From the NCBI RefSeq assembly GCF_001194135.2, contig NC_068990.1, positions 65,319,191 to 65,383,190 on the forward strand: DNA of 64,000 nucleotides, read 5' to 3'. Below the pieces are notes generated by a model that worked only from the letters and a program-made list of their open reading frames with translations, did no database searches and was not told where the DNA came from. Of this stretch, positions 1,450-64,000 are shown piece after piece. Position 1 is the stretch's first letter, and each line of letters starts with the position of its first letter. A program made the position numbers and the translations under genes. The DNA is from Octopus bimaculoides. Taxonomy: Eukaryota.

Positions 1450-1521
1450 TGGGTGTTACAATTTCTGATTGGTACCGAAAATTATCATCAAAATTTGGAA
1501 GTTTTGCCTTATAGAGTTTTC
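1450..1521 (-). CDS. Coding exon 15 (gene continues beyond it)
   Basis: tttttatttattaaag| after a 101-nt intron ... CCCA|gtaaga; 72 nt, phase 1/1. KLYKAKLPNFDDNFRYQSEIVTP. No stop reached and I found no convincing downstream exon in 1..1449. Confidence 0.75.
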
Positions 1522-1622
1522 CTTTAATAAATAAAAACAGAATGCAAATACTTCATCACAGTGAAATGTACAGTTTATAATGTAAATCGATATCTTGATG
1601 CTAAAAACATAAAGATATTTAC

Positions 1623-1665
1623 CTGCATCCAGTCTAACATGTAGACCTATGTATTCTGCTTTAAT
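1623..1665 (-). CDS. Coding exon 14
   Basis: ttatatatttttacacag| ... GCAG|gtaaat; 43 nt, phase 0/1. IKAEYIGLHVRLDA(G). Confidence 0.75.
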
Positions 1666-3559
1666 CTGTGTAAAAATATATAAAGGAAAACAACAAATTT
1701 TGGAAAACAGAAAAATTTTCATTTTTTAATTCAAATAAAATAATTTTTAGGTTGTTACATTTATGTATTTGTCTTGTAAGACTCTTGATGTGGAATTGTG
1801 TGTTGAAACAAGTATTGTTATATTAGGGGATGGTCATTTTTAAGTTCATGCACGAATAACAAATAGCATAAACAACTTAATATAACCTGTCATTTGCTAT
1901 GTTTGTGGATGCTTTTTTTCATTCTGTAAGACCATCCTTCCACAAAATCAACCTCATCAGATGAAATAGCATATGAAGTAACCATCTTTTCATACTTGTA
2001 TGATAAAATGATTAAATTTAAACATTACTGCATGTATTTTAAGAACATTTTTGGTGTACTCTTTACAGTAGTGAAATATAGTACAAATGGTTGCAGTTGC
2101 ACAAATCCAAATGCACACTTAAATACATGAACTCTTGTTTACACTAGGAAATCAAAAAAAGTCACTGCAGATGGCCAGTCAGACTAGTAAATATGTAGTT
2201 ATATTTGTTCTTACTATAACTTAAATAACATTATTAAGAATCCAAGAGATGGTTAGTAATTTCAGGTTCATGATTTGATTTGTGCTAGATTCTTCAGTTA
2301 CAATATAGTTGTTTATTACATGCTCTCTTAAAATTCTTTGATTATGAGCTCACTATTTTACATACTTAAATGATTTTTTTTCTAAATTTCCATGTAACTC
2401 ACTAAGTCTCATATATCTCTTTATTTAAAATGACTGTTCTTAAACCAAGTGAAAGAAACAATTGTTCTGTTATAGATGTTTTCAATAGCATTTGGTTAAT
2501 AAGCCTACATTTTTATCTGGCATTTTATATTTCATTTTGATCAATATATTCAGGTGTTCTATTTCTAAATATACACAAATACTTTGGCTAGGTTTGAACT
2601 AAGAAGTTTTTGTCTATTCATATTGTAGAAAGGATTATTTTAAGTGGTTTTAATAGGTTTATGTCACAAGCCATAAGGGAAGATGTTTGTCAAATTTGAC
2701 AACTTTGTAAAATGATTAAGTCTATTTCATGCCAACTGGCTCATTTACTGAGAGCTTATTTCAGGTACCTGAGGTATTTCAGAGATTAAGAGTACATAAT
2801 TTACCCTGACAGAAACCAATTTATCACAAAGTTAAACCCCAAACAGTTACTGGTACTCTTGTGGAGCTGAATAGACTGAAGCAACATGAAGTAAAGTGCC
2901 TTGCTCAAGGACACAACATGACACTAGGTCCAGTAACTAAACCATGATTATTAGATCATGAGTTCAACACCTTAAGCACTCTTTTTCTGTCTCAGTCATG
3001 ATACAAGCTTTGATCATGGTAGCAGGGCTTGTATATCCCTATAATACAAGGAGTTATACCAGTGAAAATTGATCTAATCCAGTTGAGCAGGTCTAAGTAC
3101 AGGATCACACTAAATGAGAATCACAGTCAGAATCCTTGGGAATGTACAGATTTTGGTGGAGAAATCAATTAAGCAATGATTGATGGAGAAACTCACAAAA
3201 TGCAGAATTTGGAATTGTATTGCTGGCATTGACTAGTGCTGTCTAGTTCTGAATGTGAGCAATGACTTACATCCACAGAACTGGCAACCATAGGTATTAT
3301 TCAACCATTGAAAGATTTAATATGACTTTAATGCTGCCTAGATATTCATCTTGCATCACTTATCACATGATCAAACAAGGAACATGTTCTGCTGTGGTTT
3401 TGGTTTCTACTAGTATTTGAAAAATCAACTATAGAACCTAAAAACAAATCTATATTACTTAAATGTAAATGTCCTATGATATTTTCAATTTTGAATGCTT
3501 ACATTCTGAATGCAATTTATCAGTTTATTGAATTATCAACTAGAGCAGTTGTTGTCAAC

Positions 3560-4870
3560 ATTGAAATGAAGAGCATCCTCAACAAATACCAAGGTACATT
3601 GTTTTGATAGAAGGAGATATAAGTTTGCAAATTGATGTAATAAATATCACAAATATACATTTGAAAAAATCATCTAATAGAAATGGATAGCATTTGCAGA
3701 AATTTGTATTAGATATGGATTATTATTGATTAAATTTTTTAAAAATTCTAGAAAAAATGGTAAATTATAGATATGCATTTGTTCAATAACCAGTTAAATC
3801 TCAATTGCAAGATTAATAATAACATATGTTCAAACAAAAACTCTTCCTATCATTCCGTTGTTTATAGATTTGTCTAAAGCTTTTGACTTAATTCACAGAA
3901 ATATGATGCAGCAAATTCTACTAGCCAATGAAATCCTTCACGAAATAGTAGTTACAAAAATGATGCTCTACAAAACACTTGAGCCAATATGTGTTCACCT
4001 GATGGAGACAAATTTTTTAGTCGTTCTTGCAGATTTTTCATAAGGAGATATCCTAGCACCTTTCTTATTCAAAATCTGTCTTGATTATGCTCACCACATT
4101 TTAGGAAATTACAAAAAGATACTTGGCTTTATCCTCACAAAATAAAAAAAGCTCCAGATATCCAATTCAACAATAAAAATGAAAATTATGCTGATAACTT
4201 AGTCCTATATAGTAACCATTATCCTATTTCAAAGACTGGAAGAGCTGCAAGAGGCATTGGTTTCTATATTAACTCTAGTAAAATAGAATTCATCAGTTAA
4301 AATTTATAAAGTACAACAACCTCATTATCTGGAAGTTCAATTAAACCATCAAATTCCTTTATGTACCTTGGAAACAACATAACATCTTCAGTGTCAGATG
4401 CTTAGATATGTATCAGCAAAATTTGGGAAGCATTTAAAATCTCATGTAATATGGAAATCTAAGCAACCAGGAGATTGTAAAAGAAACTTCATTTGCTTAG
4501 TGATTGAATCTTGGTTGTTTCATGGCTCTTTCACCTGGACGCTAACCAAAAAATTTGAAACCATGCTAGATGGCACTGATACATGTATGATTCATGCCAT
4601 TTTGAATATGTCCTAGAAAGAATTTCCAAACAAAGAAAAATTATACAATATACCTCCTAAAGTATTCAAGAAAGAAGAGTTCATGTTGCTGGTTAGTGAC
4701 ATCCAACTATGGACACCCAAACAAATTAAAATTACATTAGTTTACCCAGCAAAGACATACAGTGATCATTTAAGTGATGACTCTGGACAGTACCAAGAGT
4801 AATTGTCACACGCCCTGGAAGATAAAGATAGATGGAAAATCAGAGTAATCTGAATTCAAGCAAACTCAAC
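3560..4870 (+). mobile_element. Degenerate RTE-type LINE, RT fragment
   Basis: FIDLSKAFDLIHR and GDILAPFLF-like motifs in broken frames. Boundaries approximate. Confidence 0.7.
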
Positions 4871-4907
4871 CTGATGATAATAATGGCGATGATAAATTGC
4901 TTAATAG

Positions 4908-5228
4908 GCGCAGAAGTGGCTGTGTGCTAAGTAGCTTGCTTACCAACCACATGGTTCCAGGTTCATTCCCACTGCGTGGCATCTTGGGCAAGTGTCTTCT
5001 ACTATAGCCTCGGGCCAACCAAAGCCTTGTGAGTGGATTTGGTAGACGGAAATTGAAAGAAGCCCGTGTGTTTACGTTCCCGTAACTTAGCGGTTCAGCA
5101 AAAGAGACTGATAAAATAAGTACTAGGCTTCCAAAGAATAAGTCTTGGGGTCGATTTGCTCGACTAAAGGCGGTGCTCCAGCATGGCCACAGTCAAATGA
5201 CTGAAACAAGTAAAAGAGTAAAAGAGTA
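4908..5228 (+). mobile_element. tRNA-derived SINE of the abundant family (resembles the Octopus OK-type SINE)
   Basis: tRNA-like head (gtggctgtgtgctaag...ggttccaggttcattccc) and tail cagcatggccacagtc...actgaaacaagtaaaagag. Related copies or fragments at about 11880-12268(-), 17690-18065(-), 22325-22480(+), 50470-50895(-), 52725-52960(+), 53510-53680(+), 54880-55100, 57270-57500 and 57770-57950. Confidence 0.8.
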
Positions 5229-5921
5229 ATTAACTGCTCAACATCATGCACAGGACAGGTTTAATATGTTCATCTGATTGTTCCTAGTTGTGATATAATG
5301 ATCTCGATGTTTTTCTTTGGTTCTTTGACTATATTGAAAACTCTATCCTACAATGTTGTTTGATTTATATTTTTGCATTATGCATGTTCAACTAATTTAT
5401 TGATTGTTAGAAAATGAAAAATTTCACTGCCCTATTTTGAGATTAAGTGCTTTACTCTTGTAAGTTCTGCAACAAAGTGGATGCTATAAATACAATTATT
5501 TAATTTTCTTACTCTTGGATAGACTTTATTAATTTTGAACAGTCTTTCAATTTTATAAAATCTAGATATTTTCCATCTACTCAGTCATACCGTTGCAGTA
5601 AGTTACCATATATTTATAACTTTCTAACTTACACAAACTCTGATATTACAGAACTGACTATCAGTTATGTAGCCCAAGTTGTTTCTAAATAAATATTATT
5701 TCCTCACCTATATATATCTCAAATACTTATATGTTTTCTTTACTATCTTGCAAAAATTGATTAGAATTGGCATGGACAATTTGTTGATCAGATCTATTAC
5801 ATAATTTCCAAATAAGCATATAACTTTATAAACATATAATAAACACATAAATATATTCCTACATGTCATTAAAAAGATAAAAGTGAAAATCAAAAGCATT
5901 TTCATAACAAAAAATACTTAC

Positions 5922-6019
5922 ATTTCCAACACTAACAGTAAAGATGAACTCCCTCTGAGCAATTGCACTACTTAATGTTTGAAATGCCGTTCGAAGAGTA
6001 GAACCTTGACTTTTAGTTC
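5922..6019 (-). CDS. Coding exon 13
   Basis: ttgtttttgctaatttcag| ... AAT|gtaagt; 98 nt, phase 1/0. TKSQGSTLRTAFQTLSSAIAQREFIFTVSVGN. Lies inside ORF 5859..6215. Confidence 0.85.
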
Positions 6020-7240: not shown

Positions 7241-7524
7241 ATATGTATATATACATATATATGTATATATATAATGTATATATATATATATAAATCTACT
7301 AAAATTACTTAACCTCCCTAGCTAACCTGTTATGAGGAATTTCAACCATGTTTCGTGGTCTGCTACCACAACAGCTCCTTTATAGGATCCAGTTAGCTCA
7401 AGACATCATCAGGAGGAACCACGTCCGGTTTCGGCCCCTACTCCTCTACCGTTTTGACGTGGCGGGGCCCCTCCTTTCGGAGGTGTCTTCAACCTTTCTA
7501 TCAACCTCTCTATCAACCTTTCTT

Positions 7525-9590
7525 TTTTCCTTATTGCATACTTTGTTGTCACTTGGGCATGCTATATTTGTGATCCAGCATCGTTTGCTTTCTTTCTCAA
7601 TTAACACTATGCCTGGTTTCATATTCTCTATCTCATCATTGCACTGAATCATAAAATCCCATAAGATCTTCGCATTATCATTTTCGATGATGCTTCGGGT
7701 TTATGTGCATACCACATTTTACTCTGTCAAGTCCATACTTGTTGCAAAGTGTCCAATGGATAATCCTTGCTATATTGTCATGACGTCTCTTATATTCTCT
7801 TTGGGCTAGTGGCATGCATTGACTGGTAATATGCCCTATAGTTTCACCATTTTGTCCACAAATTCTGCACATATCACTCTCTGATGTGTTATCTGTTCAG
7901 TATTTGATGCAATTGGTTCTTAATGCTTACTCTTGGGCAGCACAGATCAGAGCCTTTGTTTCCACTTTTAAATTACTTTTAGTCATCCATAGCCATCTTT
8001 TTTCACTGCCTGTCTTACCTTCAGCACCCCTATGAAATTGTCCATGCATTCTTTTCTTTATCCACCTATTTTCAGTTTCATTCATTCTCAAGTTCTTGTA
8101 CAGTGCTTTATCTTTGCAATCTTCCATCCTACACAAGCCTGATCTTCTTACTTCCAATATTAGCAGTTCTGTGTCATTTTTTACATACCGTGCTATGTTG
8201 TTTTCTTCTGCTCTAATGCTATGTTCATATCCAATCAGTCCACTTCCCCCTTTTTCTCTTGGTACATATAGTTTGTCTGTGTAACTTTTTGGATGGAGTA
8301 TCCCATATCTAATCAGCAATTTCCTTGTCTTTCTGTCTAATCTGTTTAATTCGTCTACCATCCATGTGATTACCCCTGCTCCATATCTAAGGAGTGAAAC
8401 TGCCCAGCTTCAATCTTATTCTGTCTGTTTAATTTCGACTTAAGGATTAGTCTCAGTCTGCACAAGTACTCCACCTTAAATTTTTCTGTCATTTCTTTCT
8501 CCATGAATTTATCCATTTCTCAAATCCCCAAGTACTTATAACCCATCTCTTCTATCTGTTTCATAACATACTCTGATAGTATCGCTAGCCCGTCCATACA
8601 TCTGATTTTTCACCTCTTCAAGACTAATACACCACACTTTTTCAGTTCAAACTTCATTCTGATATCAGCACTGAAAGTATACACCTTATCAACGAGGGAA
8701 CTGACTTGGGATTCATCTTTACCATAAAGTGGTTGACATTTTGTTGGTGGCTCTTGAATACATACTCAGCTTTTGCTTTCTTCAGAATCAGTGTTAATGG
8801 TATCATGCACAGTACAAAGATCCCTAAACTTCTTCCATATGCTGTCAGTTCTGTCCTGCACCATACTCTTTCCTAGCAATCGTTCAACATTTGATACAAT
8901 ACCAAATAGGTTCATACATTCCATAATCCAAGAATGGGGAATCATATCGTATGATAATCAATCCATGACATGGCTAAGTTTTCCTCTTCTTTCAGTCTCT
9001 AAGTACAGTTTTGTCTATCAGGAGTCGATCCTTGGTACCTCTGCACTTACACTTGCAACCCTTCTGCTCATGTGGCAGGGCTCCATTTTTTTCCAGATGT
9101 CTGTACATTGACTCTGTGACTATCCCAGTCAATAATTTCCACATAAGTGGTAGGCAGGACATTGGCCTGTAATTGTCTATCGTATTGCCTTTTCTGGTGT
9201 TTTTCAAGCACAGCACTGTCTTACCCATTGTCAACTACTCTGGTGTTACTTGGTTGGCATTTAAAAAGGTATTGAGTTGTACAGCTATTTGTGCATGACA
9301 TTCACCAAATTTTTTGATCCAGTAGCCTTGAACTCTATCTAGTCCTGGGGCCTTCCAGTTACCCATTTTTTTTTTGCTGATTTCTTCAAATCTGTAACTT
9401 TCAAAGCCTGTGACAATAATTTGATGCCTCTATGACTTCTTCTCTCCAGGGTATTTCCGTTGCCTTTTGCCATGAGGGACCAAGTACCTTTGCTGCCTTC
9501 ATATCCTTAATTATTCTATCTACTATACTGCTGTCAACTTGGATGGCTGCTTCCTCTGTTTGGTCTACTTGGTTCCAAAAGAAGATTATC
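7525..9590 (-). mobile_element. R4/Dong-like non-LTR retrotransposon (RT + CCHC + restriction-like endonuclease), fragmented
   Basis: ORF pieces [65 protein letters not shown], and KPGIVLIEKESKRCWITNIACP (PD..D-type REL motif). Confidence 0.85.
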
Positions 9591-9671
9591 TATATATTCA
9601 GTTATATTTCTTTTTTAGCATTACATATTTTTAAAGTCAACAGACCCGTGAAGCAGTGTGATTAGTTGATA

Positions 9672-11565: not shown

Positions 11566-11727
11566 CTTCAGGTGTATTGTCCAGGATACTTGCATATAAA
11601 TACATTAAGTTAGCATCGTAAGACAATTGAACATTTTGTATTTGAAGAGCATCAATGCTCAAAAGTTTCCGAATCATTGCTTTCCCTAGTGTTTCAATTA
11701 CCTCTTTTGTAGATTTGATGTAGTTAC
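11566..11727 (-). CDS. Coding exon 12
   Basis: tttgtttcgttaaag| ... GAAG|gtaagt; 162 nt, phase 1/1. NYIKSTKEVIETLGKAMIRKLLSIDALQIQNVQLSYDANLMYLYASILDNTPE(G). Confidence 0.9.
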
Positions 11728-12369
11728 CTTTAACGAAACAAATATGATTAGTCAGATGAAATTTACATATTTTTGAAGTGATTTATCATTAAAATAGTAA
11801 AGACTGATTGACAATTGTCCACTTTAATTTCTATTTACATGTTTCGATTGGTATAATCTTGTGACATCTTTTATCTTTTATATTTTTTCAGTCATTATAC
11901 TGTGGCCATGCTGGGGCACTGCCTTGACAAATTTCAATTGAATGAATCAATCCCAGTATTTATTTTTTCAAAGGCTGGTACTTATTCTATCTGTCTGTTT
12001 TGCCAAACCACTAAGTTATGAGGATGTAAACACATCAACATCAGTTGTCAAGAAGTGGACACGGATGCACACACACACACACACACACACACACGTCTGA
12101 CAGGCTTCCTTCAGTTTCCATCTACCACATCCACTCACAAAGCTTTTGGTCAGCTTGAGGCTATAGTAGAAGACACTTATCCAAGGTGCCACACAATGAG
12201 ATTGAACCTGGAACCATGTGGTTGGGAAGCAAACTTATTATCACATGGTCACATCTGCGCCTACGATTAAGTACTCTTTTACATTTTATCTTTTACGTGC
12301 CTCAATCTCTTGACTCTGACTATGCTGGGTCATTGCCTTGAAGAATTTTTGTCAAGCAAATCGACCCCT

Positions 12370-12880
12370 GTGCTTATTCTTATTTTAAAGCCTAGTCTAT
12401 TGTCTTTTTTGCTGAATTGCTAAGTTATGGGAATGTAAACACACCAACACCAGTTGTCAAACGGGGACACACAAACACACACATGCACAGACATATTCTT
12501 ATTTTAAAGCCTAGTCTATTGTCTTTTTTGCTGAATTGCTAAGTTATGNNNNNNNNNNTGAATTGCTAAGTTATGGGAATGTAAACACACCAACACCAGT
12601 TGTCAAACGGGGACACACAAACACACACATGCACAGACATATTCTTATTTTAAAGCCTAGTCTATTGTCTTTTTTGCTGAATTGCTAAGTTATGGGAATG
12701 TAAACACACCAACACCAGTTGTCAAACGGGGGCACACAAACACACACATGCACGGACATATTCTTATTTTAAAGCCTAGTCTATTGCCTTTTTTGCTGAA
12801 TTGCTAAGTTATGGGAATGTAAACACACCAACACCAGTTGTCAAACGGGGACACACAAACACACACATGCACGGACATAT
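12370..12880. repeat. 119-bp tandem array derived from a SINE segment
   Basis: Unit atattcttattttaaagcctagtctattg...cacacatgcacRgac recurs (e.g. 12639 and 12758), about 4 copies, with a 10-N gap inside. Confidence 0.85.
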
Positions 12881-13037
12881 TTCACTTATTTTTGTCCTGT
12901 AATTACTGTCCATGTCTTGTATTTATCTCTCGTGTGCATGTTTTTTGCATCTTTGGTGACATCCTGTACCCATATATGCATGCATATATCTATATATATA
13001 TATGTATGTATGTATAGAGTGTTAGCTGTGGTGTACA

Positions 13038-16257: not shown

Positions 16258-16372
16258 CACTCAAAAGTATTGAAATATGCATCTTTTTACTTGCTTCATA
16301 ACAAGATGATACGTCAGTCTCTTTTTGCTGACCCGAAAAATCAATGAAGCTAAGTTGATATGATATGTCAGC
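16258..16372 (-). CDS. Coding exon 11
   Basis: atttatttatag| ... AGTG|gtaagt; 115 nt, phase 0/1. ADISYQLSFIDFSGQQKETDVSSCYEASKKMHISILLS(G). Confidence 0.85.
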
Positions 16373-17057: not shown

Positions 17058-17132
17058 CGTGTCTAAATTAACCATTACAGGATAATTTACAGTTGCTTGT
17101 CCACTTTTATCAGGTAAAACTGTCCAGTCATT
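17058..17132 (-). CDS. Coding exon 10
   Basis: tttatatttttag| ... ACG|gtaaat; 75 nt, phase 0/0. NDWTVLPDKSGQATVNYPVMVNLDT, parallel to exon 5 (NEW...SPIRFTLE). Confidence 0.85.
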
Positions 17133-22114: not shown

Positions 22115-22222
22115 AGATGATAAATAAATTTCACAAGTTGCAGATTCTGGTGAGCCATCTTCAAGCATAAACTGTTTTTTATGAGCAGCAAACACAAAAC
22201 AATCGATATTCCGAATTGTTCT
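22115..22222 (-). CDS. Coding exon 9
   Basis: tctttttccttccag| ... TCT|gtgagt; 108 nt, phase 0/0. RTIRNIDCFVFAAHKKQFMLEDGSPESATCEIYLSS, internally homologous to exon 4 (IIRGIPVKTF). Confidence 0.9.
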
Positions 22223-25506: not shown

Positions 25507-25679
25507 CAATCCAACATATTCAAAGTCTTTTTTTTGGATGAAACTTTGCATTATGCTCCTAATAAGGTATCCTTCATATGGTGCCTCTCCTAACATCTGT
25601 TTTTCATCTGCAAGTGATGAGTTTTTAATTTTTGATGTTGAACAATTTCCAAGCACATGATTTCTCAAGTATCGAATGC
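25507..25679 (-). CDS. Coding exon 8
   Basis: atttactttaaag| ... TTG|gtaagc; 173 nt, phase 1/0. IRYLRNHVLGNCSTSKIKNSSLADEKQMLGEAPYEGYLIRSIMQSFIQKKDFEYVGL. Confidence 0.9.
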
Positions 25680-28576: not shown

Positions 28577-28694
28577 CTGCATTATAATCATATATTTCTG
28601 ATATTGTGTTCACAAACTCTGGATGAGGGCTATCCTCATTGCCTCCAGGCTGATAGTCAATTCTCAATAATTGATCTGGTTTACTATAGGACAC
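28577..28694 (-). CDS. Coding exon 7
   Basis: tttttatatcattcacag| ... GCAG|gtttgc; 118 nt, phase 0/1. VSYSKPDQLLRIDYQPGGNEDSPHPEFVNTISEIYDYNA(G). Confidence 0.9.
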
Positions 28695-36538: not shown

Positions 36539-36655
36539 ATCAATAATTTTTACTTGAGAGTCAGATGTAAGCTCAATGCTTGCTGAAAATGTTGGTGGTA
36601 GATCTGGAAGGCTCATGTTACTCTTTCTACCTGGGCATACAATTCCTTTTGGTGA
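36539..36655 (-). CDS. Coding exon 6
   Basis: ttcag| ... GAT|gtaagt; 117 nt, phase 0/0. SPKGIVCPGRKSNMSLPDLPPTFSASIELTSDSQVKIID. Lies inside ORF 36173..36709. Confidence 0.9.
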
Positions 36656-41695: not shown

Positions 41696-41844
41696 CTCAA
41701 AAACAGTCTCTGAATTGTCTTGAATACTTTTAAAAAAAGAATGATATTCATAGGTATGGTTCAGGCCTTGTTTTACACCTGTTTGTTCCAAGGTAAAACG
41801 AATGGGACTTCCAGCAACACCTCCAATATTTATCCATTCATTTG
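41696..41844 (-). CDS. Coding exon 5
   Basis: ctttatttttcag| ... GAG|gtaagt; 149 nt, phase 1/0. NEWINIGGVAGSPIRFTLEQTGVKQGLNHTYEYHSFFKSIQDNSETVFE. Confidence 0.9.
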
Positions 41845-46219: not shown

Positions 46220-46322
46220 CAGCAAAATTCATAGTCAGTTTAAATTTTGTGGATTGCCACTCAATATTTGCAACAAAAGTTTTTACAGGTATTCCCCTTA
46301 TGATATTTTTTCCACTGGAGAA
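46220..46322 (-). CDS. Coding exon 4
   Basis: ctttcttttttataaaag| ... GCTG|gtaagt; 103 nt, phase 0/1. FSSGKNIIRGIPVKTFVANIEWQSTKFKLTMNFA(A). Confidence 0.9.
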
Positions 46323-46628: not shown

Positions 46629-46765
46629 CATTCGTGAATTGGCTAGTAATTTCATAACACTTGATGAGCGGTAAATAAACTTCTTGTTTGACAAATTTAT
46701 TTCTCCAAAGGGGTAGGTACCGTTTATTGGTGAAATACCAGATACTTTGCATTGACGTTTACCAT
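46629..46765 (-). CDS. Coding exon 3
   Basis: attttacag| ... ATG|gtaaaa; 137 nt, phase 1/0. GKRQCKVSGISPINGTYPFGEINLSNKKFIYRSSSVMKLLANSRM. Confidence 0.85.
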
Positions 46766-50751: not shown

Positions 50752-51567
50752 CTATGATAGGCTTCTTTCAGTTTCTGCCTAACAAATCCACTCACAAGGC
50801 ATTGGTAAGCCCAAAGTTATAGTAGAAGACACTTGCCCAAGGTGCTACACAGTGGGATTGAACCTGGAACCATGTAGTTGGGAAGCAAACTTCTTAAATA
50901 AGGAGCCAACACAGGTTTCTGTTATTTGAGTGTCTTAGATGCAATGGTTCAATGTAATCAATTGATTCATAGTAAATCAATTTTAGTACTATGTAGAGCT
51001 AAAGGTAGATGTAGGAACATAATTTTTTCAAGGCATTCATCATTTGGAGGCTGAAGTGAACTAATGGTTGTAGTAGCTGAGGAAGTGACCAAAACTTTGT
51101 ACAGGGTGAGGGAAAGAGATGGTAAAGGAAGGAGATGATAGGAATTTGTAGGTAGTGATGAAATTTGCTATGTTAAGAGTTCTAGTTGTATTTAAACACA
51201 AGCTGACCTCAGTGGACATTAAAAAGATAGATAAATAAGTAGATTAAGTAGATAAATATAATTTCATTTAAGAAGGAGCAACTTATTTATGTCAGAATGG
51301 TTCAACTCACTGATCACTGATGCTAAATACAATATAAATGAACAAGATACACAAATTAGACATATAATAAGATATTAGAAGTATTTGAAGAAGGAAAGCA
51401 ATATTGTTGTTAAAGGGTAACAAAATTATACCTATAATAAAAATATTAATAATTGAATTATAGTACACACTAAAAGAACTGAAAGGAATTATGTCAAAAG
51501 GATTAGTAAAGAGAAAAGAAACAATCACAAAACTGCCTAGGTAGTGAAACATCAACACCATCATCAA

Positions 51568-51627
<60 letters not shown>

Positions 51628-53022
51628 TTTACATCTGTTTTCCTTGCTGGTATGGGTTGGGTGGCTTGACAGAAACTGGCAAGGTCAGGGGCTACACTAG
51701 CTACCATAGCCTGTTTTGGTTTGGTTTTATGGCTAGATGCCCCTCCTAATGCCAACCACTCCACAAAGTGTACTGGATGCTTTTTACATGGCACTATCAC
51801 CAGTGCCTTTTATGTGGCACCAGCACCCACACCAGTGCTTTTTACATGACACCTTTATTTTAAGATATCAATTCTGTTGTGGTGGGCAGATCTTCTCGAA
51901 TACAACAATGCACAACATATCTTGGTCTTCTGTCATCTTTATAAGGTTCAGCGTTTTGGAATCAGCCTTCAGTACTTTGTCCCATGTCTCCCTAGGTCTT
52001 CTCTTCCACAAATTTCATTCACTTTAAGTGATTGGCACTCCTTTATGCAACTGTCCTCATCCATCCACATCACATGACCTAACCAGTATAGTCTCCTCTC
52101 TTGCACATTACATCTAATTCCTCTTATGCCCAATTTCTCATTCAATATGCCAATGCTCTGCCACACATACATGTCTTCTTTCCTCCCTGAGGAAAAGGGA
52201 TACATATGACAATATATATGACCATGTCTAGCCATGAGATGTCAACTCACTCTTGTCCTTTATTCAAAACAGACAGTCTTCTAGTCTTAGATTTAGTAGT
52301 TGATAAAGAAATAAATGAATTAGAAACGAATTACAATCCTCTACAAGCTATGACCTCAATGGGCTTCCTGCGATTCTTGGAAGTGTAGTCTATTCTTAGC
52401 TATGATGGTGACAACAGGAATTTCTTCCATCTTGTTGCTCTGTTAAAGTATTTGAGAAAAATTATATTAATGTGTCTGACTGGTTAAAATTTTATTTATT
52501 TATTTGTGCAGGTGGTGATGGCACTGCAATTAAATTGATCTAATGATTGCATTATTCAATTAAATGGAGCCCCTTGAAACGGTCGTACTGCATCACTTCT
52601 TGATATCCTGTTGCTTATTTTGATTTTATTTGAGCTGTACGGATAATACCGGACTGACTTGGTGCTTCAACTTAAGTACCTAATTCAACTGAATCTCAGT
52701 TATTTCTTATATATAAGTACATATATTTATGTGTGTGTGTCTTTGTGTCTGTGTTTGTCCTCCCACCATCATTTGACAACCGATGTTGGTGTGTTTACGT
52801 CCCTGTAACGTAGTGGTTTAGCCAAAGAGACTGAGAGAATAAGTACTACGCTTACAAAGAATAAGTACTGGGTTGATTTCTTTGACTAAAAACCTTTAAG
52901 GTGGTGCTCCAGCATGGCCACAGTCAAATGACTGAAACGTGTAAAAGAATAAGAGAATAAAAGAATACATACATATACACATACACTACATACACTACAT
53001 GCACACACACACACACACGCAC

Positions 53023-53073: not shown

Positions 53074-53840
53074 CATTCGTTTTTACATCTTTTTACCCAT
53101 GCTAGTACGGATTATATGAATATATTATTGAGGCATTGTTTTACAGCTAGATGCCCTTTCCCTTTACCTATTTTCGAAGTTAGGGATCTCTTATTTCACA
53201 TATTTTCAAAGGTGCAAAGCCACTGGAAAATTTCATACAGGAAAAATGACAATATCAGTATTTTGTGGTTCATGAATTTTTGAGAAGTGCAAACATTTCA
53301 AACAAGCACACACATGTGCATGCACACCCCACCACACACGCACACGCGCACACACACGCACACGCGCACACACACGCACAGAACACACAAAAATACATAT
53401 ACACATGCATGTGTAAGTATGCGTATGTGTGTGTATGTGTATGCGTGTGTGTATGTGTATGAGTGTGTATGTGTATGTGTATGTGTGTGTATGTGTATGT
53501 GTGTGTGTGCATGCATTGACTGTGGTAAGAAGTTTGCTTCCCAACCACATGGTTCCAGGTTCAGTCCCACTATGTGGCACCTTAGGAAAGTGTCTTCTAT
53601 TATACCCCTGGGTCGACGAAAGCCTTGTGAATGGATTTAGCTGATGACAACTGAAAGAAGCCTGTTGTATGTATTTATATATATGTATATATGTNNNNNN
53701 NNNNNNNNNNNNNNNNNNNNNNNNNNNNNNNNNNNNNNNNNNNNNNNNNNNNNNNNNNNNNNNNNNNNNNNNNNNNNNNNNNNNNNNNNNNNNNNNNNNN
53801 NNNNNNNNNNNNNNNNNNNNNNNNNNNNNNNNNNNNNNNN

Positions 53841-56242: not shown

Positions 56243-59029
56243 NNNNNNNNNNNNNNNNNNNNNNNNNNNNNNNNNNNNNNNNNNNNNNNNNNNNNNNNNN
56301 NNNNNNNNNNNNNNNNNNNNNNNNNNNNNNNNNNNNNNNNNNNNNNNNNNNNNNNNNNNNNNNNNNNNNNNNNNNNNNNNNNNNNNNNNNNNNNNNNNNN
56401 NNNNNNNNNNNNNNNNNNNNNNNNNNNNNNNNNNNNNNNNNNNNNNNNNNNNNNNNNNNNNNNNNNNNNNNNNNNNNNNNNNNNNNNNNNNNNNNNNNNN
56501 NNNNNNNNNNNNNNNNNNNNNNNNNNNNNNNNNNNNNNNNNNNNNNNNNNNNNNNNNNNNNNNNNNNNNNNNNNNNNNNNNNNNNNNNNNNNNNNNNNNN
56601 NNNNNNNNNNNNNNNNNNNNNNNNNNNNNNNNNNNNNNNNNNNNNNNNNNNNNNNNNNNNNNNNNNNNNNNNNNNNNNNNNNNNNNNNNNNNNNNNNNNN
56701 NNNNNNNNNNNNNNNNNNNNNNNNNNNNNNNNNNNNNNNNNNNNNNNNNNNNNNNNNNNNNNNNNNNNNNNNNNNNNNNNNNNNNNNNNNNNNNNNNNNN
56801 NNNNNNNNNNNNNNNNNNNNNNNNNNNNNNNNNNNNNNNNNNNNNNNNNNNNNNNNNNNNNNNNNNNNNNNNNNNNNNNNNNNNNNNNNNNNNNNNNNNN
56901 NNNNNNNNNNNNNNNNNNNNNNNNNNNNNNNNNNNNNNNNNNNNNNNNNNNNNNNNNNNNNNNNNNNNNNNNNNNCGAGAAAAAATAATTTCTGGAGATA
57001 TCATTGACTCTATTATTATCTAGTGTAACAATTTAAAAATGATAATATTATAATTAATAATATAGGCGATTGCAGCCCCCTGCTGAAAAGCATTAAATAG
57101 CAGAAGGATTAAAATTAATCAAAGGACACACTAAGTATGTCTATCTGCTGGAAATGACGGTCAAAACTTATTTAAATTGCCAAAATACACTGATGATAAC
57201 TACAGAAATCAACTATCCGAAGGCAAATGGGCTAAGACAAAATTTATATGTATATGTATATACTTATGTGTGTGTGTCTTTGTGTTTATGTTTGTCCCAC
57301 ACCAATGTATGAAAACCAGTGCTGGTGTGTCTGTATCCTTATAACTTAGTGGTTCAGCAAAAGAGGCCAATAGAATAAATACCAGGATTTAAAAAAAGTC
57401 AAATAAGTACTGGGGTTGATTCATTTGACAAAAAATTCTTCAAGTCGGTGCCCCAGCATGGCCACAGTCTTATTAGTAAAACATGTAAAAGATATAAGGT
57501 AAAAAATGCCTGGATCCAGTAAGGATTTCAGTATTGTTGATGGTGGTTGTTGTGCCTTTCAATAGATGAGCGTGGTTGCAGGTGGGTGCTGTTGACAGTG
57601 GCAGGGAGAGGCTGTTGTAGTAGCAGCAACATCTAAGGTTTCCATATGTGAAGTATGCCCCTCCCCTCTCTCTCTCTCTATGTATGTGTATATAATCATC
57701 ATCATCATCATCACTGTTTAACAGTCATTTTACACACACACACACACACACGCACACACATTCATATACTCTTTTACTCTTTTACTTGTTTCAGTCATTT
57801 GACTGCGGCCATGCTGGAGCACAGTCTTTAGTCGAGCAAATCGACCCCAGGATTTATTTTTTGTAAGCCTAGTAGTTATTCTATCGGTCTCTTTTGCCGA
57901 ACCGGTTGTCAAGCGATGTTGGGGGACAAACACAGGCACACAAACACATACACACNNNNNNNNNNNNNNNNNNNNNNNNNNNNNNNNNNNNNNNNNNNNN
58001 NNNNNNNNNNNNNNNNNNNNNNNNNNNNNNNNNNNNNNNNNNNNNNNNNNNNNNNNNNNNNNNNNNNNNNNNNNNNNNNNNNNNNNNNNNNNNNNNNNNN
58101 NNNNNNNNNNNNNNNNNNNNNNNNNNNNNNNNNNNNNNNNNNNNNNNNNNNNNNNNNNNNNNNNNNNNNNNNNNNNNNNNNNNNNNNNNNNNNNNNNNNN
58201 NNNNNNNNNNNNNNNNNNNNNNNNNNNNNNNNNNNNNNNNNNNNNNNNNNNNNNNNNNNNNNATATATATACACACACATATCTTACCAAAAACTCCCTC
58301 AACTTCCATATTTTCCTTTCCAAATTGTTTTGTGACTCAAGTTCTGATGACTTTGATCACTAGCCTCTGTTGGAAAACAATTGAATCATCAAGGATAATG
58401 ACTGGGATGCAGAGAATATGAGGAAGGACTTAATATTCACAAGCAGTCATCTATTCTACATCCAGGTGGATAAAAAGTTTGTTTGACTAGTAGGTGATCA
58501 TGCCAAAATACACTGATGATAACTATGATGGTAGGTGATCATGAGGTGATGTAACTGATTAGATCATCTGCATCCCCAAAACTTTAAAAGTCTCGATCCT
58601 TTCTAATTCCTCATACAGTATGTATAGCTTCCATATCCATGGAACTAACTATCATGTTGTCACTCAATATGTCCAGCCATGATAATGAGGTCACTACCAT
58701 TCATTATTGAGATAGTCTGCCAAAGGGCCTCAAAGAAAAGATACTTTTCTTTCATTTGTCAGTTTGCATTTTTTAATAGCACGGTCTGTATGCAAAGATC
58801 ATACTGCAGCATGCTCAATTCAGCAATTGTCCTCTTCTCTATGAAATGTTTTAGTTGATATTTTTGACTTGAATAGTTGCAAAATTATCATCAATCTGAA
58901 TAGATCCAATTTACTAGCCAAAGCACGAAGCTGTTGTTTTTATGAAATTCAAACAATCTTTTAACACCATGAAGGCCAACATATCTTTCCATGCTTGATA
59001 GTCTAAGCCAATAAAATCAATATGAAATT

Positions 59030-60513: not shown

Positions 60514-60717
60514 CAGATATAAATAGGACTTGTTTGAAATCTTTGTATTGGATAATCCTTGAAGTGTTTTTATCCGCAAATTGTATTATTGCATCCCGTT
60601 TATTATCAGGGTCATTATATTCATATTCTAGTATTGAAAATTTTCCATTTTCATCATTTATTTCAACTATTGACTGAAAAGCATTTTTAAAAATATCTCT
60701 GTCAAATATTTGTTTAT
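60514..60717 (-). CDS. Coding exon 2
   Basis: ttgttttcag| ... TCTG|gtaagt; 204 nt, phase 1/1. KQIFDRDIFKNAFQSIVEINDENGKFSILEYEYNDPDNKRDAIIQFADKNTSRIIQYKDFKQVLFIS(D). Overlaps ORF 60452..60727. Confidence 0.9.
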
Positions 60718-61710: not shown

Positions 61711-61832
61711 ATTATTTTGCTGACCTTGCTTTGGGTCAATAATATAAATATCAGTTGAACACAGGGGTTGATGTAATCAACTTACTTCATCTCCCAAACT
61801 TTCTGGTCTTGTGCCAAAATATGAAACCATCA

Positions 61833-61927
<95 letters not shown>

Positions 61928-62239
61928 AATGTTGTTGCTGTTGTTGTTGAAAGCAGCAAGCTGGCAGAATTGTTAGCATGCTGGATGGAATGCTTAGCAG
62001 TATTTTGCCATTGCTACGTTCTGAGTTTAAATTCCAACAAGGTCGACTTTGCCTCTTATCCTTTTGGGTCAATAAATTAAATACCAGTTGAGTACTGAGG
62101 TTGATGCAATCGACTTGGCTTCTACCCCCAAATCTCAGGCCTTGTGCCTATAGTAGAAAGGATTGTTATTGTTATAATCTGCATGTTTGTTGCAATCACT
62201 TGTTGAAACACACCTAACACCCTAGGGCAAGTGAAGGAT

Positions 62240-63345
62240 AAGAGATATTACAGTAAAACTGAAAGCTTGGGGAGGGGAAGTGGAAGGGGAAGTTAACTGG
62301 AATCTTACAGAGCTCCAATGCCTGGACAGGAAGGCAAGAAAACTGCTAACATCTAAGAACATCCACCACCCAAAGCAGACGTTGATCATATGTACCTACC
62401 TAGAAGTAATGGGGGAAGAAGAATGATGCAGGTAGAACTGTGCTATAAGACCTCCACAATAGCAATGAACAGGTACTTAACTAGTACAGAGGACTGGATG
62501 CTGTGGTTTGTGTGCAAACAAAAAAGCAGCAAAAGATCACATTCTATTGTCAAGGAAGCTTGCAAATTCACAAGGGCACTTGGCGTTAAGCCTGAGTTAG
62601 CTGAAGAACGTGAAACCACTGCCACAAAACAAGCAAAACGGATCAAGCAGACTGTATAGAAGAACTGGCAGAAACAAATTGAGGAGCAGTGGATCCAGAA
62701 GCCTCTGTATAGACAGTATATACTTCGAAGTTGAAGTGCTTATGTAGACCAAGCAACAACCCATCAGTGGCTGAGAAGTTCAGGACTGAAGGCTTCATAT
62801 TGGCAGCACAAGATCAAAGCTTGCTTACCAGAAACTACTGGGTTAACATTCTTCAAAACAGTTCTGACCCTAAATGCAGATTCTGTGACACATTTGATGA
62901 AAAAAATAGACCATCTCATTTCAGGATGTCCTGTGCTGACACCAAACGAATACAAAACTTTCCACGATAGGGCAGGACAGTATTTACATTGGAAAATCTT
63001 GTAAACACTATAAAATCAGCACTCCTACTTACTGGTATGAACATCATCCTGAGCCAGTCATTGAAGGTGAAAATGTTAATATCCTCTGGGATTTTCCAGT
63101 CAAGACTGACAGAATGATCCAGGATAATCGACCAGACACAATTATTGCAATGATGAGATTGAAACACTGAACCACCTAATCTCTGGGTGTAAAGTTCTAG
63201 TACCTATACAGTATAAATCAAGACACGACAGAGTTGGCCAATATCTACACTGGTTAATATGTCAGCATTATAAAATGAAATCTGCTGACAAATAGTACAA
63301 GCACCACCCTGTAACAATTCTGTGGGACTTTCCAGTACATACAGA
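62240..63345 (+). mobile_element. R4/Dong-like LINE 3' part with a duplicated CCHC/REL segment
   Basis: MYLPRSNGGRRM, TEGFILAAQDQSLLTRNY, CRFCDTFDE..HLISGC, ILWDFPVKTDRMIQDNRPD; then again ETLNHLISGCKVL..HDRVGQYLHW..ILWDFPVHTD. Confidence 0.8.
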
Positions 63346-63692
63346 CCTGTGGTTGGCTTGTGGATATAATAGAAGACACTTGCCCAAGATACCATGTAGT
63401 TGGGAAGCAAGCTTCTTACCACACAGCCATACCAGTGCCTTTTCATTAAAATTTTTGGTGATTTGAATGCTGGCTGTATTTATCATTTTAAGATATGTGA
63501 CGAAGATGAAAACTATTCATAAAATAAGTTAGATTTTATATGTAATTTAATGTCTCTGCCCAATCATTTTAAACATTATTTAGCATTTTCCCAACTGCCA
63601 CAAGCTCCTGTACCAAAACATTTTTCAGAGTAAGTTTTCGGCAAGTTATAACATCCTTATTAGATATCACAAATACATTTAATAAAACTTAC

Positions 63693-63768
63693 CATCATTC
63701 ATGGGCTCAGAAAGTTGTCCCAACACTTGTGTTAAAGTTAAGCAACCAATAAGTATCGTATGAAGCAT
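63693..63768 (-). CDS. Coding exon 1 (signal peptide) of a secreted ependymin-related/LolA-like repeat protein
   Basis: Acceptor ttatcttttcag| at 63788, ATG at 63768, donor GATG|gtaagt. Encodes MLHTILIGCLTLTQVLGQLSEPMND(D), a hydrophobic signal-peptide-like N-terminus. Ends phase 1, matching exon 2. Confidence 0.85.
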
Positions 63769-64000
63769 TTTTATTCCTTTTTCATTTACTGAAAAGATAA
63801 TTTATAACATGAAAATTTCATTTGGCAATAAAATCCAGAATTAATAAATTTACTTGAATAACATCAATTGACTACAGTACAAAGTGCCATGAATGAGCCA
63901 TGCTAGGAACATCATTATGAGAACATATTCAAAATGAGATAATACAAGAATAGAGAGGAATGAGTGATGTGATTGCAGAGTACCAAAAGCACAAGTTCTG

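What the first reader, a model, noticed from the sequence alone, without database searches (positions are those of the whole stretch)
1450..63788. Hidden 15-exon gene for a large secreted glycoprotein of repeated ependymin/LolA-like lobes
The ORF track does not show this gene, but 15 exons with canonical GT-AG sites join in frame into 583 codons. Seen directly: a signal peptide, 7 N-x-S/T sequons in the first ~330 aa (NTS, NGT, NLS, NHT, NMS, NCS, NSS) and a clear internal repeat. Lobe 1 has F..IVEI..EYEYND..C..IIRGIPV..NEW..P(I)..YEY..F and lobe 2 has F..SIEL..VSYS..RIDY..EIYDYNAGIRYL..LGNC..YVGLRTIRNIDC..NDW..PV..YQLSF. The lobes are joined by a TVFESPKGIVCP linker. The IYDY..G..Y....GNC and YVG..TIR...C motifs resemble ependymin-related proteins (EPDRs), which have the LolA lipid-binding fold (established for vertebrate EPDR1). 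Inference: a poorly characterised multi-lobed metazoan LolA-like lipid-binding or lysosomal/extracellular protein, much larger than a single-domain EPDR.
Basis: partly seen in the sequence, partly recalled or inferred. Interest (0 to 1): 0.7.

Follow-up and report, generated by a model that had tools for sequence, protein, structure and literature searches.

The report
Octopus membrane protein with EPDR-like lobes
The window holds the first 15 exons (about half) of a real octopus gene for a large cell-surface glycoprotein built from repeated ependymin/LolA-type lipid-pocket domains; its family is found in molluscs, worms and amphioxus, is listed in databases, and has never been studied.

Summary
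The hidden gene is real. On the minus strand, 15 exons (63768 down to 1424) join through canonical AG/GT sites into 592 open codons. All eight assembly gaps lie in introns, and relatives align across every gap-bearing intron without missing residues.

Exon 15 ends at a strong AAA|GTGAGT donor, and "VS*" is intron read-through. The Octopus vulgaris ortholog (CAI9729013.1, 1143 aa, 82-84% identical) continues into a third lobe, three PAN/apple domains, a transmembrane helix and a tail, none of which map in the window. The product is therefore a type I membrane protein, not a 583-residue secreted one.

The fold call holds. An AlphaFold model (pLDDT 84.7, pTM 0.82) has two 11-strand beta lobes. 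Foldseek's best PDB hits are EPDR1 and sponge EPD-BCP1, then LolA, VioE and RseB (probability 1.00). The internal repeat is invisible by pairwise comparison (z about 0.3) but clear between family profiles (E about 1e-28).

Pfam Ependymin is not matched, and profile-profile links to EPDR1 are weak (P 3e-4 to 0.08). These are divergent EPDR-like domains, not family members by sequence criteria. The sequon count is no more than chance.

The family has 186 relatives and no paper was found on it. Interest is moderate to low.

The parts
63693..63768 (-). Exon 1, aa 1-26: start codon at 63768 and signal peptide MLHTILIGCLTLTQVLG; donor G|GTAAGT
   Evidence: P0001 aligns at 92% identity over aa 1-25.
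60514..60717 (-). Exon 2, aa 26-94: first five strands of lobe 1 (FQSIVEIN...EYEYND...IIQYKDFKQVLFIS)
   Evidence: Strands E39-93 in the model.
46629..46765 (-). Exon 3, aa 94-139: the invariant C99 and the loop region of lobe 1. It extends to the ATG|GTAAAA donor and so includes VMKLLANSRM.
   Evidence: P0002 is collinear here. The FG-to-VRGI spacing counted against the consensus fits only the extended exon.
46220..46322 (-). Exon 4, aa 140-174: lobe 1 strands (GKNIIRGIPVKTFVANIEW...KLTMNFA)
41696..41844 (-). Exon 5, aa 174-223: last strands of lobe 1 (NEW...PIRF...HTYEYHSFF) and the first half of the TVFE linker
36539..36655 (-). Exon 6, aa 224-262: linker SPKGIVC(230)PGRK and the first strands of lobe 2; donor GAT|GTAAGT lies 25 nt before assembly gap 36222-36513
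   Evidence: P0001 has SQVKIVDV|YYSK running contiguously across this junction.
28577..28694 (-). Exon 7, aa 263-302: lobe 2 (VSYSKPDQLLRIDY...EIYDYNAG), carrying the YD...R motif and the invariant D298
25507..25679 (-). Exon 8, aa 302-359: lobe 2 (IRYL...GNC314S with the conserved sequon N313, a helix, and Y356-x-G358)
22115..22222 (-). Exon 9, aa 360-395: lobe 2 (RTIRNIDC367FVF...)
17058..17132 (-). Exon 10, aa 396-420: lobe 2 (NDW...YPVMVNL), with the W and PV landmarks
   Evidence: Aligned to EPDR1.
16258..16372 (-). Exon 11, aa 421-459: last strand of lobe 2 (YQLSFIDF), the invariant tail cysteine C444, and the first strand of the next domain (MHISILLS)
11566..11727 (-). Exon 12, aa 459-513: the alpha-beta-beta part of a small alpha/beta (beta-alpha-beta-beta-alpha-beta-beta) domain
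   Evidence: 88% identity to P0001 380-436. Secondary structure (P0001 373-430).
5922..6019 (-). Exon 13, aa 513-545: second helix and a strand of the alpha/beta domain (AFQTLSSAIAQREFIFTVSVGN)
1623..1665 (-). Exon 14, aa 546-560: last strand of the alpha/beta domain (IKAEYIGLHVRLDAG)
1424..1521 (-). Exon 15, aa 560-592: start of lobe 3 (KLPNFDDNFRYQSEIV...ELVK). It ends at the donor AAA|GTGAGT and the reading frame is still open.
   Evidence: It aligns with the start of lobe 2 and with P0001 483-516.
1415..1423 (-). This is the 5' end of intron 15, not coding sequence.
   Evidence: P0001 continues ELVK|IFYDKTKNL....

Best explanation
The window contains the 5' half of an octopod gene: 15 coding exons spread over 62 kb of repeat-filled introns on the minus strand. 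It is the ortholog of Octopus vulgaris CAI9729013.1.

The full protein is a type I membrane glycoprotein. In order it has:
- a signal peptide;
- two tandem ~200-residue beta-clam lobes of the EPDR/LolA fold;
- a small alpha/beta domain;
- a third such lobe (only its first ~30 residues are in the window);
- a second alpha/beta domain with a PAN/apple domain inserted in it;
- two more PAN domains, a transmembrane helix and a short cytoplasmic tail.

Each lobe keeps one cysteine after the sixth strand and one in its C-terminal tail (C99/C230 and C314/C444). This is the pattern of the most conserved EPDR disulfide.

Inferred function: by analogy with EPDR1 (lipids, fatty acids, gangliosides), the sponge carotenoid-binding EPD-BCP1 and bacterial LolA, the lobes hold hydrophobic ligands in their curved-sheet pockets or at the interface between lobes. 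The two adjacent lobes may act as a covalently linked counterpart of the EPDR dimer. The PAN domains would provide protein or glycan contacts, and the membrane anchor would keep the assembly at the cell surface or in an endo-lysosomal membrane.

Shown: the gene structure, orthology, domain architecture and fold. Inferred: the disulfide pairing, ligand binding, the pseudo-dimer arrangement and the cellular location.
For: Gene model:
- 15 AG/GT exons, 592 open codons.
- P0001 is 82-84% identical and collinear over exons 1-2 and 5-15. P0002 (37% identity) and P0003 (28%) are collinear over exons 2-13.
- tblastn places every P0001 segment on the predicted exons in order.

Truncation by the window:
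- There is a GTGAGT donor after exon 15.
- P0001 residues beyond 516 find nothing in the window.

Family:
- 186 HMMER relatives, 87 of them at E<=1e-10, from molluscs, annelid, nemertean and Branchiostoma.
- PAN_1 domains in the long forms.
- C-terminal hydrophobic helix and tail.

Fold:
- AlphaFold2 model with pLDDT 84.7 and pTM 0.82, two lobes of 11 strands each.
- Foldseek top hits are EPD-BCP1, EPDR1 from frog, human and mouse, LolA, VioE, RseB and LprG, at probability 1.00 and target TM-score 0.56-0.69.
- With the ortholog model the first 17 hits are all EPDRs.

Repeat:
- hhalign lobe 1 vs lobe 2 E 1.2e-28; lobe 3 vs lobe 2 E 1.6e-61.

EPDR landmarks:
- C99, C230, C314 and C444 are invariant in 59-60 of 60 relatives.
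- Alignments to an EPDR1 profile are co-linear and place YD...R, the strand-6 Cys, W, PV and the tail Cys correctly, with P = 3e-4, 0.08 and 0.0024 against 0.18-0.66 for reversed controls.
- UniProt names two relatives 'LolA-like domain-containing protein'.

Ligand-binding precedent: PMC6363788, PMC6608618 and PMC10470211.
Against: - There is no RNA evidence for this gene in this species. The junctions rest on canonical splice sites and cross-species collinearity.
- Pfam Ependymin does not match the window protein at E<=10. EPDR1 and LolA are not found by sequence or family-profile search of the PDB. EPDR kinship therefore rests on predicted structure plus weak profile signals.
- I could not read the model coordinates. 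Pocket hydrophobicity, disulfide geometry and the lobe-lobe arrangement are untested.
- No member of the family has any experimental characterisation. The function is analogy only, and LolA-fold proteins do diverse things (PMC6363788).
- The membrane anchor is seen in the ortholog, not in the window.
Confidence: 0.8

Rival explanations
1. One reading: a complete gene of about 583 codons whose product ends at ...ELVKVS* and is secreted as a soluble two-to-three-lobe EPDR-like glycoprotein.
For: An in-frame TAA lies 6 nt past exon 15. An intron-retaining or early-polyadenylated isoform cannot be excluded without RNA data. Some relatives are short or have shorter isoforms, for example the 593-aa isoform of the oyster protein.
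Against: The site is a strong donor (AAA|GTGAGT). The ortholog splices at exactly this residue and goes on for 627 more residues. Stopping here would leave only the first ~30 residues of an 11-strand lobe. By inspection of the sequences read, full-length relatives end with a hydrophobic helix (family consensus).
Confidence: 0.06
2. The lobes are LolA-superfamily beta-clams but not specifically related to ependymins. The EPDR-like landmarks would be convergent or shared by the whole superfamily.
For: There is no Pfam PF00811 match. The family profile does not find EPDR1 in PDB sequences. hhalign probabilities are only 0.7-40%. In the first fold search a LolA chain ranks fifth with almost the same E-value as the EPDRs.
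Against: With the ortholog model the first 17 Foldseek hits are all EPDRs, about 10 to 100 times better in E-value than VioE, RseB or LolA. The strand-6-to-tail cysteine pair is an EPDR hallmark, and the bacterial LolA-type structures have no disulfides (PMC6363788); it is invariant here in both lobes. Three relatives give recurrent weak Ependymin hits. Forward profile P-values beat the reversed controls for all three lobes.
Confidence: 0.15
3. The locus is a decaying pseudogene or an assembly chimera, stitched together across gaps, that only looks like a gene.
For: The window is riddled with transposon relics, SINE-like repeats and eight N gaps. Part of exon 3 plus intron 3 has been duplicated into intron 4. 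The word-index search found no identical annotated protein.
Against: There are 592 codons without a stop or frameshift across 15 exons, and all splice sites are canonical. All family-invariant residues are retained (C99, C230, D298, C314, Y356, G358, C444). Exon order and orientation match the ortholog across every gap. The search also missed P0001, which is 82% identical, so its silence carries no information.
Confidence: 0.03
4. The protein's main role is adhesive or structural, through its PAN/apple domains and glycans. The beta-clam lobes would serve as protein-protein modules rather than ligand pockets.
For: PAN domains are known as protein- and carbohydrate-binding modules (general knowledge). 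They are present in the long forms. LolA-fold proteins also act by binding proteins (RseB binds RseA; PMC6363788). Sponge EPD-BCP1 binds its ligands at the dimer interface rather than in the pocket (PMC10470211).
Against: The short forms (~620-660 aa) have the two lobes, the alpha/beta domain and the membrane anchor but gave no Pfam (PAN) match. The lobes are therefore the conserved core. Hydrophobic-ligand binding is described as the unifying feature of the fold superfamily (PMC6363788).
Confidence: 0.25

Closest known systems
Octopus vulgaris CAI9729013.1 / UniProt A0AA36B7T2 ('Hypothetical predicted protein'; 'Apple domain-containing protein'), 1143 aa
   Same: Ortholog. It has a near-identical signal peptide (16 of 18 residues) and is 82-84% identical and collinear with exons 1-2 and 5-15.
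   Different: It comes from a different species. Its gene model lacks the ~80 residues encoded by window exons 3-4, so its lobe 1 is broken (low pLDDT at 75-106). It contains the C-terminal half (lobe 3, PAN x3, TM helix, tail) that lies outside this window.
Vertebrate EPDR1 / MERP and fish ependymins (Pfam PF00811; PDB 6E8N, 6E7O, 6JL9, 6JLA, 6JLD)
   Same: Both have a signal peptide and N-glycosylation sequons. Both have an ~11-strand LolA-type beta-clam of ~200 residues, and EPDR1 chains are among the closest structural matches. Each lobe keeps a cysteine after strand 6 and another in the C-terminal tail, like EPDR1 C113-C210. The YD...R, W and PV landmarks align.
   Different: Sequence similarity is below the Pfam threshold. 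EPDRs are single-domain soluble proteins of ~213 aa that form non-covalent dimers (PMC6280359, PMC6363788, PMC6608618). Here three lobes are fused in one chain with alpha/beta and PAN domains and a membrane anchor. EPDR1's N-terminal C42-C172 and vertebrate C88-C222 disulfides have no conserved counterpart.
Sponge EPD-BCP1 (PDB 8I34), an ependymin-related blue carotenoprotein
   Same: It is the top Foldseek hit. It is an invertebrate secreted glycoprotein in which two EPDR-fold subunits act as a pair (PMC10470211).
   Different: EPD-BCP1 is a heterodimer of two separate chains that binds carotenoids at the interface. In the octopus protein the two lobes are covalently tandem, and nothing is known about a ligand.
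Bacterial LolA/LolB, VioE, RseB, LprG (CATH 2.50.20)
   Same: They share the beta-clam fold at Foldseek probability 1.00. A hydrophobic pocket is the superfamily's unifying feature (PMC6363788).
   Different: The bacterial structures have no disulfides (PMC6363788), and there is no detectable sequence similarity. They are periplasmic or cytosolic proteins, and they rank below the EPDRs with the ortholog model.
EPDR + cathepsin fusion proteins (clade described in PMC6363788)
   Same: They are a precedent for an EPDR-fold domain fused to other domains in eukaryotes.
   Different: The partner domains differ: a cathepsin there, alpha/beta plus PAN plus a TM helix here. Those proteins have a single EPDR domain rather than tandem lobes.

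Membership tests
Ependymin / EPDR family (Pfam PF00811) | Match to the Pfam Ependymin model above the gathering score (32.3 bits) | tested here: not met
   No hit at E<=10 for the 443-aa draft or for either lobe. Relatives P0007, P0010 and P0012 give only 15-17 bits (E 0.007-0.025), on the first ~40 profile positions.
Ependymin / EPDR family (Pfam PF00811) | Profile-level homology to bona fide EPDR1 sequences | tested here: inconclusive
   hhalign of family lobe profiles against 102 vertebrate EPDR1 sequences gave P = 3e-4 (lobe 1), 0.08 (lobe 2) and 0.0024 (lobe 3), with probabilities of 0.7-40%. Reversed controls gave 0.18-0.66. The alignments are co-linear. The EPDR profile was vertebrate-only (Neff 3), which limits its power.
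Ependymin / EPDR family (Pfam PF00811) | Conserved cysteine pair linking strand 6 to the C-terminal segment (EPDR1 C113-C210, 'seen in nearly all members'; PMC6363788) | tested here: inconclusive
   Cysteines at the equivalent sequence positions are invariant in both lobes (C99/C230 and C314/C444; 59-60 of 60 relatives). They align to the EPDR1 cysteines.
Ependymin / EPDR family (Pfam PF00811) | Signal peptide; ~200-aa single-domain secreted glycoprotein (median 213 aa; PMC6280359) | tested here: not met
   A signal peptide and ~200-aa lobes are present. However, the protein is multi-domain, at least 592 aa in the window and ~1150-1220 aa in full, and the ortholog is membrane-anchored.
LolA/EPDR fold superfamily (CATH 2.50.20) | 11-stranded curved antiparallel beta-clam | tested here: met
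   The AlphaFold2 model has pLDDT 84.7 and 11 strands per lobe. Foldseek gives probability 1.00 to EPDR1, EPD-BCP1, LolA, VioE, RseB and LprG, with target TM-scores of 0.56-0.69. This rests on a predicted structure, not an experimental one.
LolA/EPDR fold superfamily (CATH 2.50.20) | Hydrophobic ligand-binding cavity | not testable with these tools
   The model coordinates could not be inspected, and no binding data exist for any member of the family.
Lophotrochozoan/cephalochordate 'LolA-like domain / Apple domain-containing' uncharacterised membrane proteins (e.g. CAI9729013.1, XP_061182284.1, XP_011416375, V4AT95) | Significant full-length sequence similarity with the collinear order lobe A, lobe B, alpha/beta domain | tested here: met
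   phmmer E-values run from 1e-196 down to 1e-10 for 87 proteins. BLASTP alignments are collinear over 430-500 residues. All invariant residues are retained.
Lophotrochozoan/cephalochordate 'LolA-like domain / Apple domain-containing' uncharacterised membrane proteins | C-terminal PAN/apple domains, transmembrane helix and cytoplasmic tail | not testable with these tools
   These parts are present in the ortholog and the long-form relatives, but they would lie beyond position 1 of the window.

The most novel reading that the evidence does not exclude
The gene belongs to an old bilaterian family (molluscs, annelids, nemerteans, amphioxus; not found in vertebrates in this search) of membrane-anchored receptors. 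In this reading, two fused EPDR-fold lobes recreate the EPDR dimer within one chain, presenting paired hydrophobic grooves at the cell surface next to PAN adhesion domains. That would be an undescribed class of lipid- or pigment-sensing or scavenging surface receptor, and a missing link between soluble ependymins and membrane biology.
Probability: 0.25. Interest if true: 0.55.

Novelty: new member of a known kind. Interest (0 to 1): 0.35.

Why it matters
For annotation: the window gives a better N-terminal gene model than the deposited O. vulgaris ortholog, which lacks two exons.

For biology: EPDR/LolA-fold proteins are known as small soluble lipid or pigment binders whose physiological role in animals is still unclear. 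A conserved family in which three such domains are fused, joined to PAN domains and tied to a membrane would widen the known architectures of this fold. It would also offer a tractable invertebrate system for asking what EPDR-type pockets bind.

The family already sits in public databases with automatic 'LolA-like domain' and 'Apple domain' labels. This is therefore an uncharacterised but not unseen family, and the finding is solid rather than surprising.

Tried and rejected
1. A word-index homology search with a 302-aa exon concatenate found nothing. It also missed the 82%-identical P0001, so this says nothing about annotation status. The exhaustive HMMER search was needed.
2. Pfam and PDB sequence searches with the protein and with the family profile found no EPDR or LolA.
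3. Pairwise lobe 1 vs lobe 2 comparison (BLASTP, and Smith-Waterman with shuffles) was not significant.
4. tblastn of the lobes against the window, to look for further lobe-like exons, found none.
5. A home-made splice-site PWM plus codon log-odds exon finder for the 3' end did not discriminate. True exons scored -5 to +9 at their acceptors. It did rank exon 13 first, but it missed exon 12.
6. My first exon-3 donor (AGT|GTTATG, 46659) was rejected in favour of 46629. My first exon-6 donor (CAA|GTAAAA, 36554) was rejected in favour of 36539.
7. My early guess that 'MHISILLS' or 'AFQTLSSAI' begins a third lobe was wrong. These belong to the alpha/beta domain.
8. I searched intron 12 for a PAN-domain exon like the one in P0002 and P0003. 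None was found.
The 448-aa draft, which lacks 10 residues of exon 3, and the ortholog were used instead.
10. SEA-domain identity for the alpha/beta domain: no Pfam hit, and the fold search was dominated by the lobes. It is left as 'beta-alpha-beta-beta-alpha-beta-beta domain'.
11. Literature searches by accession and by domain terms found no paper on the family.

Full report
OBSERVATION. Inspecting the flanks of each motif-bearing open segment gave exon edges with AG acceptors and GT donors. Eleven exons chained in frame into a 443-residue draft.

The 3' exons could not be found from splice and codon scores alone. They became clear once relatives were in hand. The final model has 15 exons and 1776 coding nucleotides spread over 62,345 bp. 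It gives 592 codons with no stop, and every intron is GT...AG.

GAPS. As the scan's program asked, I tested the gaps first.
- All eight N runs fall within introns 2, 6, 8 and 11. Two of them, 56243-56975 and 57956-58262, were not on the list given with the finding.
- The closest begins 25 nt downstream of the exon-6 donor.
- Most gaps are flanked by (TA)n or (CA)n microsatellites. One sits inside a 119-nt tandem array.
- The Octopus vulgaris ortholog and a 37%-identical relative align without missing residues across each gap-bearing intron: FIS|DGK, KIID|VSYS, YVGL|RTIR and ILLS|GNY.
- tblastn places every ortholog segment on the predicted exons in order.
No exon is hidden in a gap, and there is no sign of misassembly.

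- Exon 3 runs 30 nt further than the weak GTTATG donor, to ATG|GTAAAA at 46629/46628. This adds VMKLLANSRM. P0002 has VMKLVKKTVV at this position. The family consensus has 34 residues between the FG and VRGI motifs, and by my count the window protein matches that only with the extension. The AlphaFold model built without these residues has its only long low-confidence stretch exactly there.
- Exon 6 ends after VKIID at a GTAAGT donor. The ortholog has VKIVD.
Exon 15 ends at AAA|GTGAGT, and 'VS*' is simply GTG AGT TAA, the start of the next intron. The ortholog continues ELVK|IFYDKTKNL... for 627 more residues. None of those residues match the window.
The gene therefore runs off the left edge of the window, and only about its N-terminal half is present.

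WHAT THE PROTEIN IS. A word-index search found nothing. Because it also missed the ortholog, that result is uninformative. The exhaustive HMMER search found 186 relatives, 87 at E<=1e-10 and 13 at E<=1e-30.

The best hit, P0001, is O. vulgaris CAI9729013.1 ('Hypothetical predicted protein'; UniProt 'Apple domain-containing protein'). It starts with a near-identical signal peptide (16 of 18 residues) and is 82-84% identical. The window therefore comes from another octopod.

The other relatives sampled are all 'uncharacterized'. They come from oysters, scallop, abalone, limpet, Biomphalaria, Dreissena, Solemya, the annelid Owenia, the nemertean Lineus and the cephalochordate Branchiostoma. UniProt automatically names two of them 'LolA-like domain-containing protein'.

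Long forms (1000-1440 aa) carry two to five PAN_1 stretches. Short forms (~620-660 aa) have no Pfam domain at all. By inspection, both kinds end in a hydrophobic helix and a short tail.

FOLD. An AlphaFold2 model of the 448-residue draft, built with 60 relatives, is confident (pLDDT 84.7, pTM 0.82). It shows two lobes of 11 beta-strands each.

Foldseek against the PDB returns only LolA-superfamily folds among its leading matches. These are sponge EPD-BCP1, EPDR1 from frog, human and mouse, LolA, VioE, RseB and LprG, at probability 1.00 and TM-scores of 0.56-0.69 normalised to the target.

A model of the full ortholog (pLDDT 80) gives the following architecture in P0001 numbering:
- signal peptide;
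- lobe 1, disrupted because that gene model lacks window exons 3-4;
- lobe 2 (165-356);
- a beta-alpha-beta-beta-alpha-beta-beta domain (373-483, equal to window exons 12-14);
- lobe 3 (496-659, of which window exon 15 encodes only the start);
- a second such alpha/beta domain with a PAN inserted in it;
- two more PAN domains;
- a TM helix (1050-1079) and a disordered tail.
Its first 17 Foldseek hits are all EPDRs, ahead of VioE, RseB and LolA.

REPEAT. Within this one protein the lobes are not significantly similar. The Smith-Waterman score is 34 against 32.6 +/- 5.2 for shuffles, and BLASTP E is above 3 apart from the linker that I had included in both queries. Between family profiles the relationship is unambiguous: lobe 1 vs lobe 2 E = 1.2e-28 over 188 columns, lobe 3 vs lobe 2 E = 1.6e-61, and lobe 3 vs lobe 1 E = 4e-22.

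IS IT AN EPENDYMIN? By sequence criteria it is not.
- Pfam PF00811 gives no hit at E<=10 for the window protein. Three relatives give only 15-17 bits against a cut-off of 32.3.
- Neither the protein nor the family profile finds EPDR1 or LolA among PDB sequences.

All the sequences listed are annotated PF00811. I compared a profile built from 102 of them with the lobe profiles.
- P = 3e-4 (lobe 1), 0.08 (lobe 2) and 0.0024 (lobe 3). Reversed-profile controls gave 0.18-0.66.
- The alignments are co-linear. They superpose the YD...R motif (EPDR1 D70/R77), the cysteine after strand 6, a tryptophan, the PV motif (P174) and the tail cysteine.

C99, C230, C314 and C444 are invariant in 59-60 of 60 relatives. 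In each lobe they occupy the positions of EPDR1 C113 and C210, described as the most conserved EPDR disulfide. The bacterial LolA-type structures have no disulfides (PMC6363788).

My reading is that these are divergent EPDR-like domains within the LolA/EPDR superfamily. I do not file them as members of the Pfam Ependymin family.

GLYCOSYLATION AND SECRETION. The seven sequons exist, but their number is what the composition predicts (5.6 +/- 2.1 in shuffles, p = 0.33). Only N313, in the GNC[S/T] motif at the strand-6 cysteine, is conserved, in 45 of 59 relatives. The signal peptide is inferred by inspection and from its conservation in the ortholog.

HOW IT PROBABLY WORKS (inference). EPDR1 has a deep hydrophobic groove. 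It binds fatty acids and anionic lipids and forms a dimer with two grooves on one face (PMC6363788, PMC6608618). Sponge EPD-BCP1 holds two carotenoids at the interface of its heterodimer (PMC10470211). LolA carries lipoprotein acyl chains.

The most likely role of the octopus protein is therefore to bind hydrophobic ligands with its tandem lobes. Lobes 1 and 2 may be packed as a covalent counterpart of the EPDR dimer. The high pTM fits a fixed inter-lobe geometry, but I could not inspect the coordinates. The PAN domains would add protein or glycan contacts, and the TM helix would fix the protein at the cell surface or in an endo-lysosomal membrane.

I put about 0.9 on the gene model, 0.85 on the fold, 0.8 on membrane anchoring in this species and about 0.4 on hydrophobic-ligand binding as the main function.

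RIVALS.
- A truncated secreted isoform ending at VS* is possible only as a minor product.
- Pure LolA-fold analogy without EPDR kinship is not excluded, but it is disfavoured by the cysteine pattern and the hit ranking.
- A pseudogene or assembly chimera is contradicted by the intact frame, the retained invariant residues and the collinearity with the ortholog.
- A mainly adhesive role cannot be excluded.

NOVELTY. No paper mentions any annotated member or this domain combination. The EPDR literature describes single-domain proteins and an EPDR + cathepsin fusion. The family is nonetheless present in public databases with automatic domain labels, and the octopus gene has an annotated ortholog. 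I therefore rate it a new member of a known kind. Interest is moderate to low.

Noticed in passing
window 45859-46059 and 46444-46657: A 215-nt segment covering the last 29 nt of exon 3 plus the first 185 nt of intron 3 is duplicated at 86% identity inside intron 4. The copy leaves a pseudo-exon fragment (minus-strand ORF 46135-46016, '...FFMKLLANQQKVKQTC').
   Followed up: partly
P0001 (O. vulgaris CAI9729013.1) residues ~75-106: The deposited ortholog model jumps from the end of exon 2 (QVLFI) to exon 5 (ANKWISIGG). It lacks the ~80 residues that window exons 3-4 encode, and AlphaFold confidence collapses there. This is probably an annotation error in that species.
   Followed up: partly
window 12375-12892: A tandem array with a 119-nt unit (also scored with a 146-nt period, 90-98% identity) lies in intron 11. 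The 10-N gap at 12549-12558 sits inside it.
   Followed up: partly
window 4905-5229, 11867-12263, 17834-18027, 22325-22483, 50692-50896, 52708-52966, 53521-53668, 57247-57904: A SINE-like interspersed element of ~150 nt occurs at eight or more sites in both orientations (76-92% identity). It is often next to (CA)n tracts and assembly gaps. None overlaps an exon.
   Followed up: partly
window 48757-49191 (-) and 43290-44303 (-): Mariner/Tc1-type transposase relics lie in intron 2 and intron 4. The first matches Pfam Transposase_1 at 4e-19. The second gives only a weak Tc3 HTH match.
   Followed up: partly
window 7400-9600 (-), 13400-13719 (+), 23478-24575 (+), 32600-34300 (-): Long intronic ORFs include reverse-transcriptase-like peptides (judged by eye). 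The pieces that I scanned gave no Pfam hit.
   Followed up: partly
window 56243-56975 and 57956-58262: Two further assembly gaps (733 and 307 N) were not on the list given with the finding. Both are in intron 2 and are flanked by (CA)n or (TA)n.
   Followed up: yes
window 51500-51627 (-), 61777-62000, 48168-48243, 37715-37859: Long trinucleotide and dinucleotide runs ((CAT)n, a run that reads as poly-L, poly-I or poly-V depending on frame, (ATT)25 and (AG)72) generate spurious long ORFs in the mechanical ORF list.
   Followed up: no
relatives P0002, P0003 vs P0001 and the window: In the long forms the PAN domain is inserted inside the alpha/beta domain, between its beta-alpha-beta-beta and alpha-beta-beta halves. 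The octopus proteins lack this insert in module 1 (no PAN exon in intron 12) but keep it in module 2.
   Followed up: partly
P0056, P0077 (Branchiostoma): The family has cephalochordate members at E 4e-15 and 4e-12, one of them labelled 'DMBT1'. The family therefore predates the protostome/deuterostome split. No vertebrate appeared among the relatives whose source I looked up.
   Followed up: no
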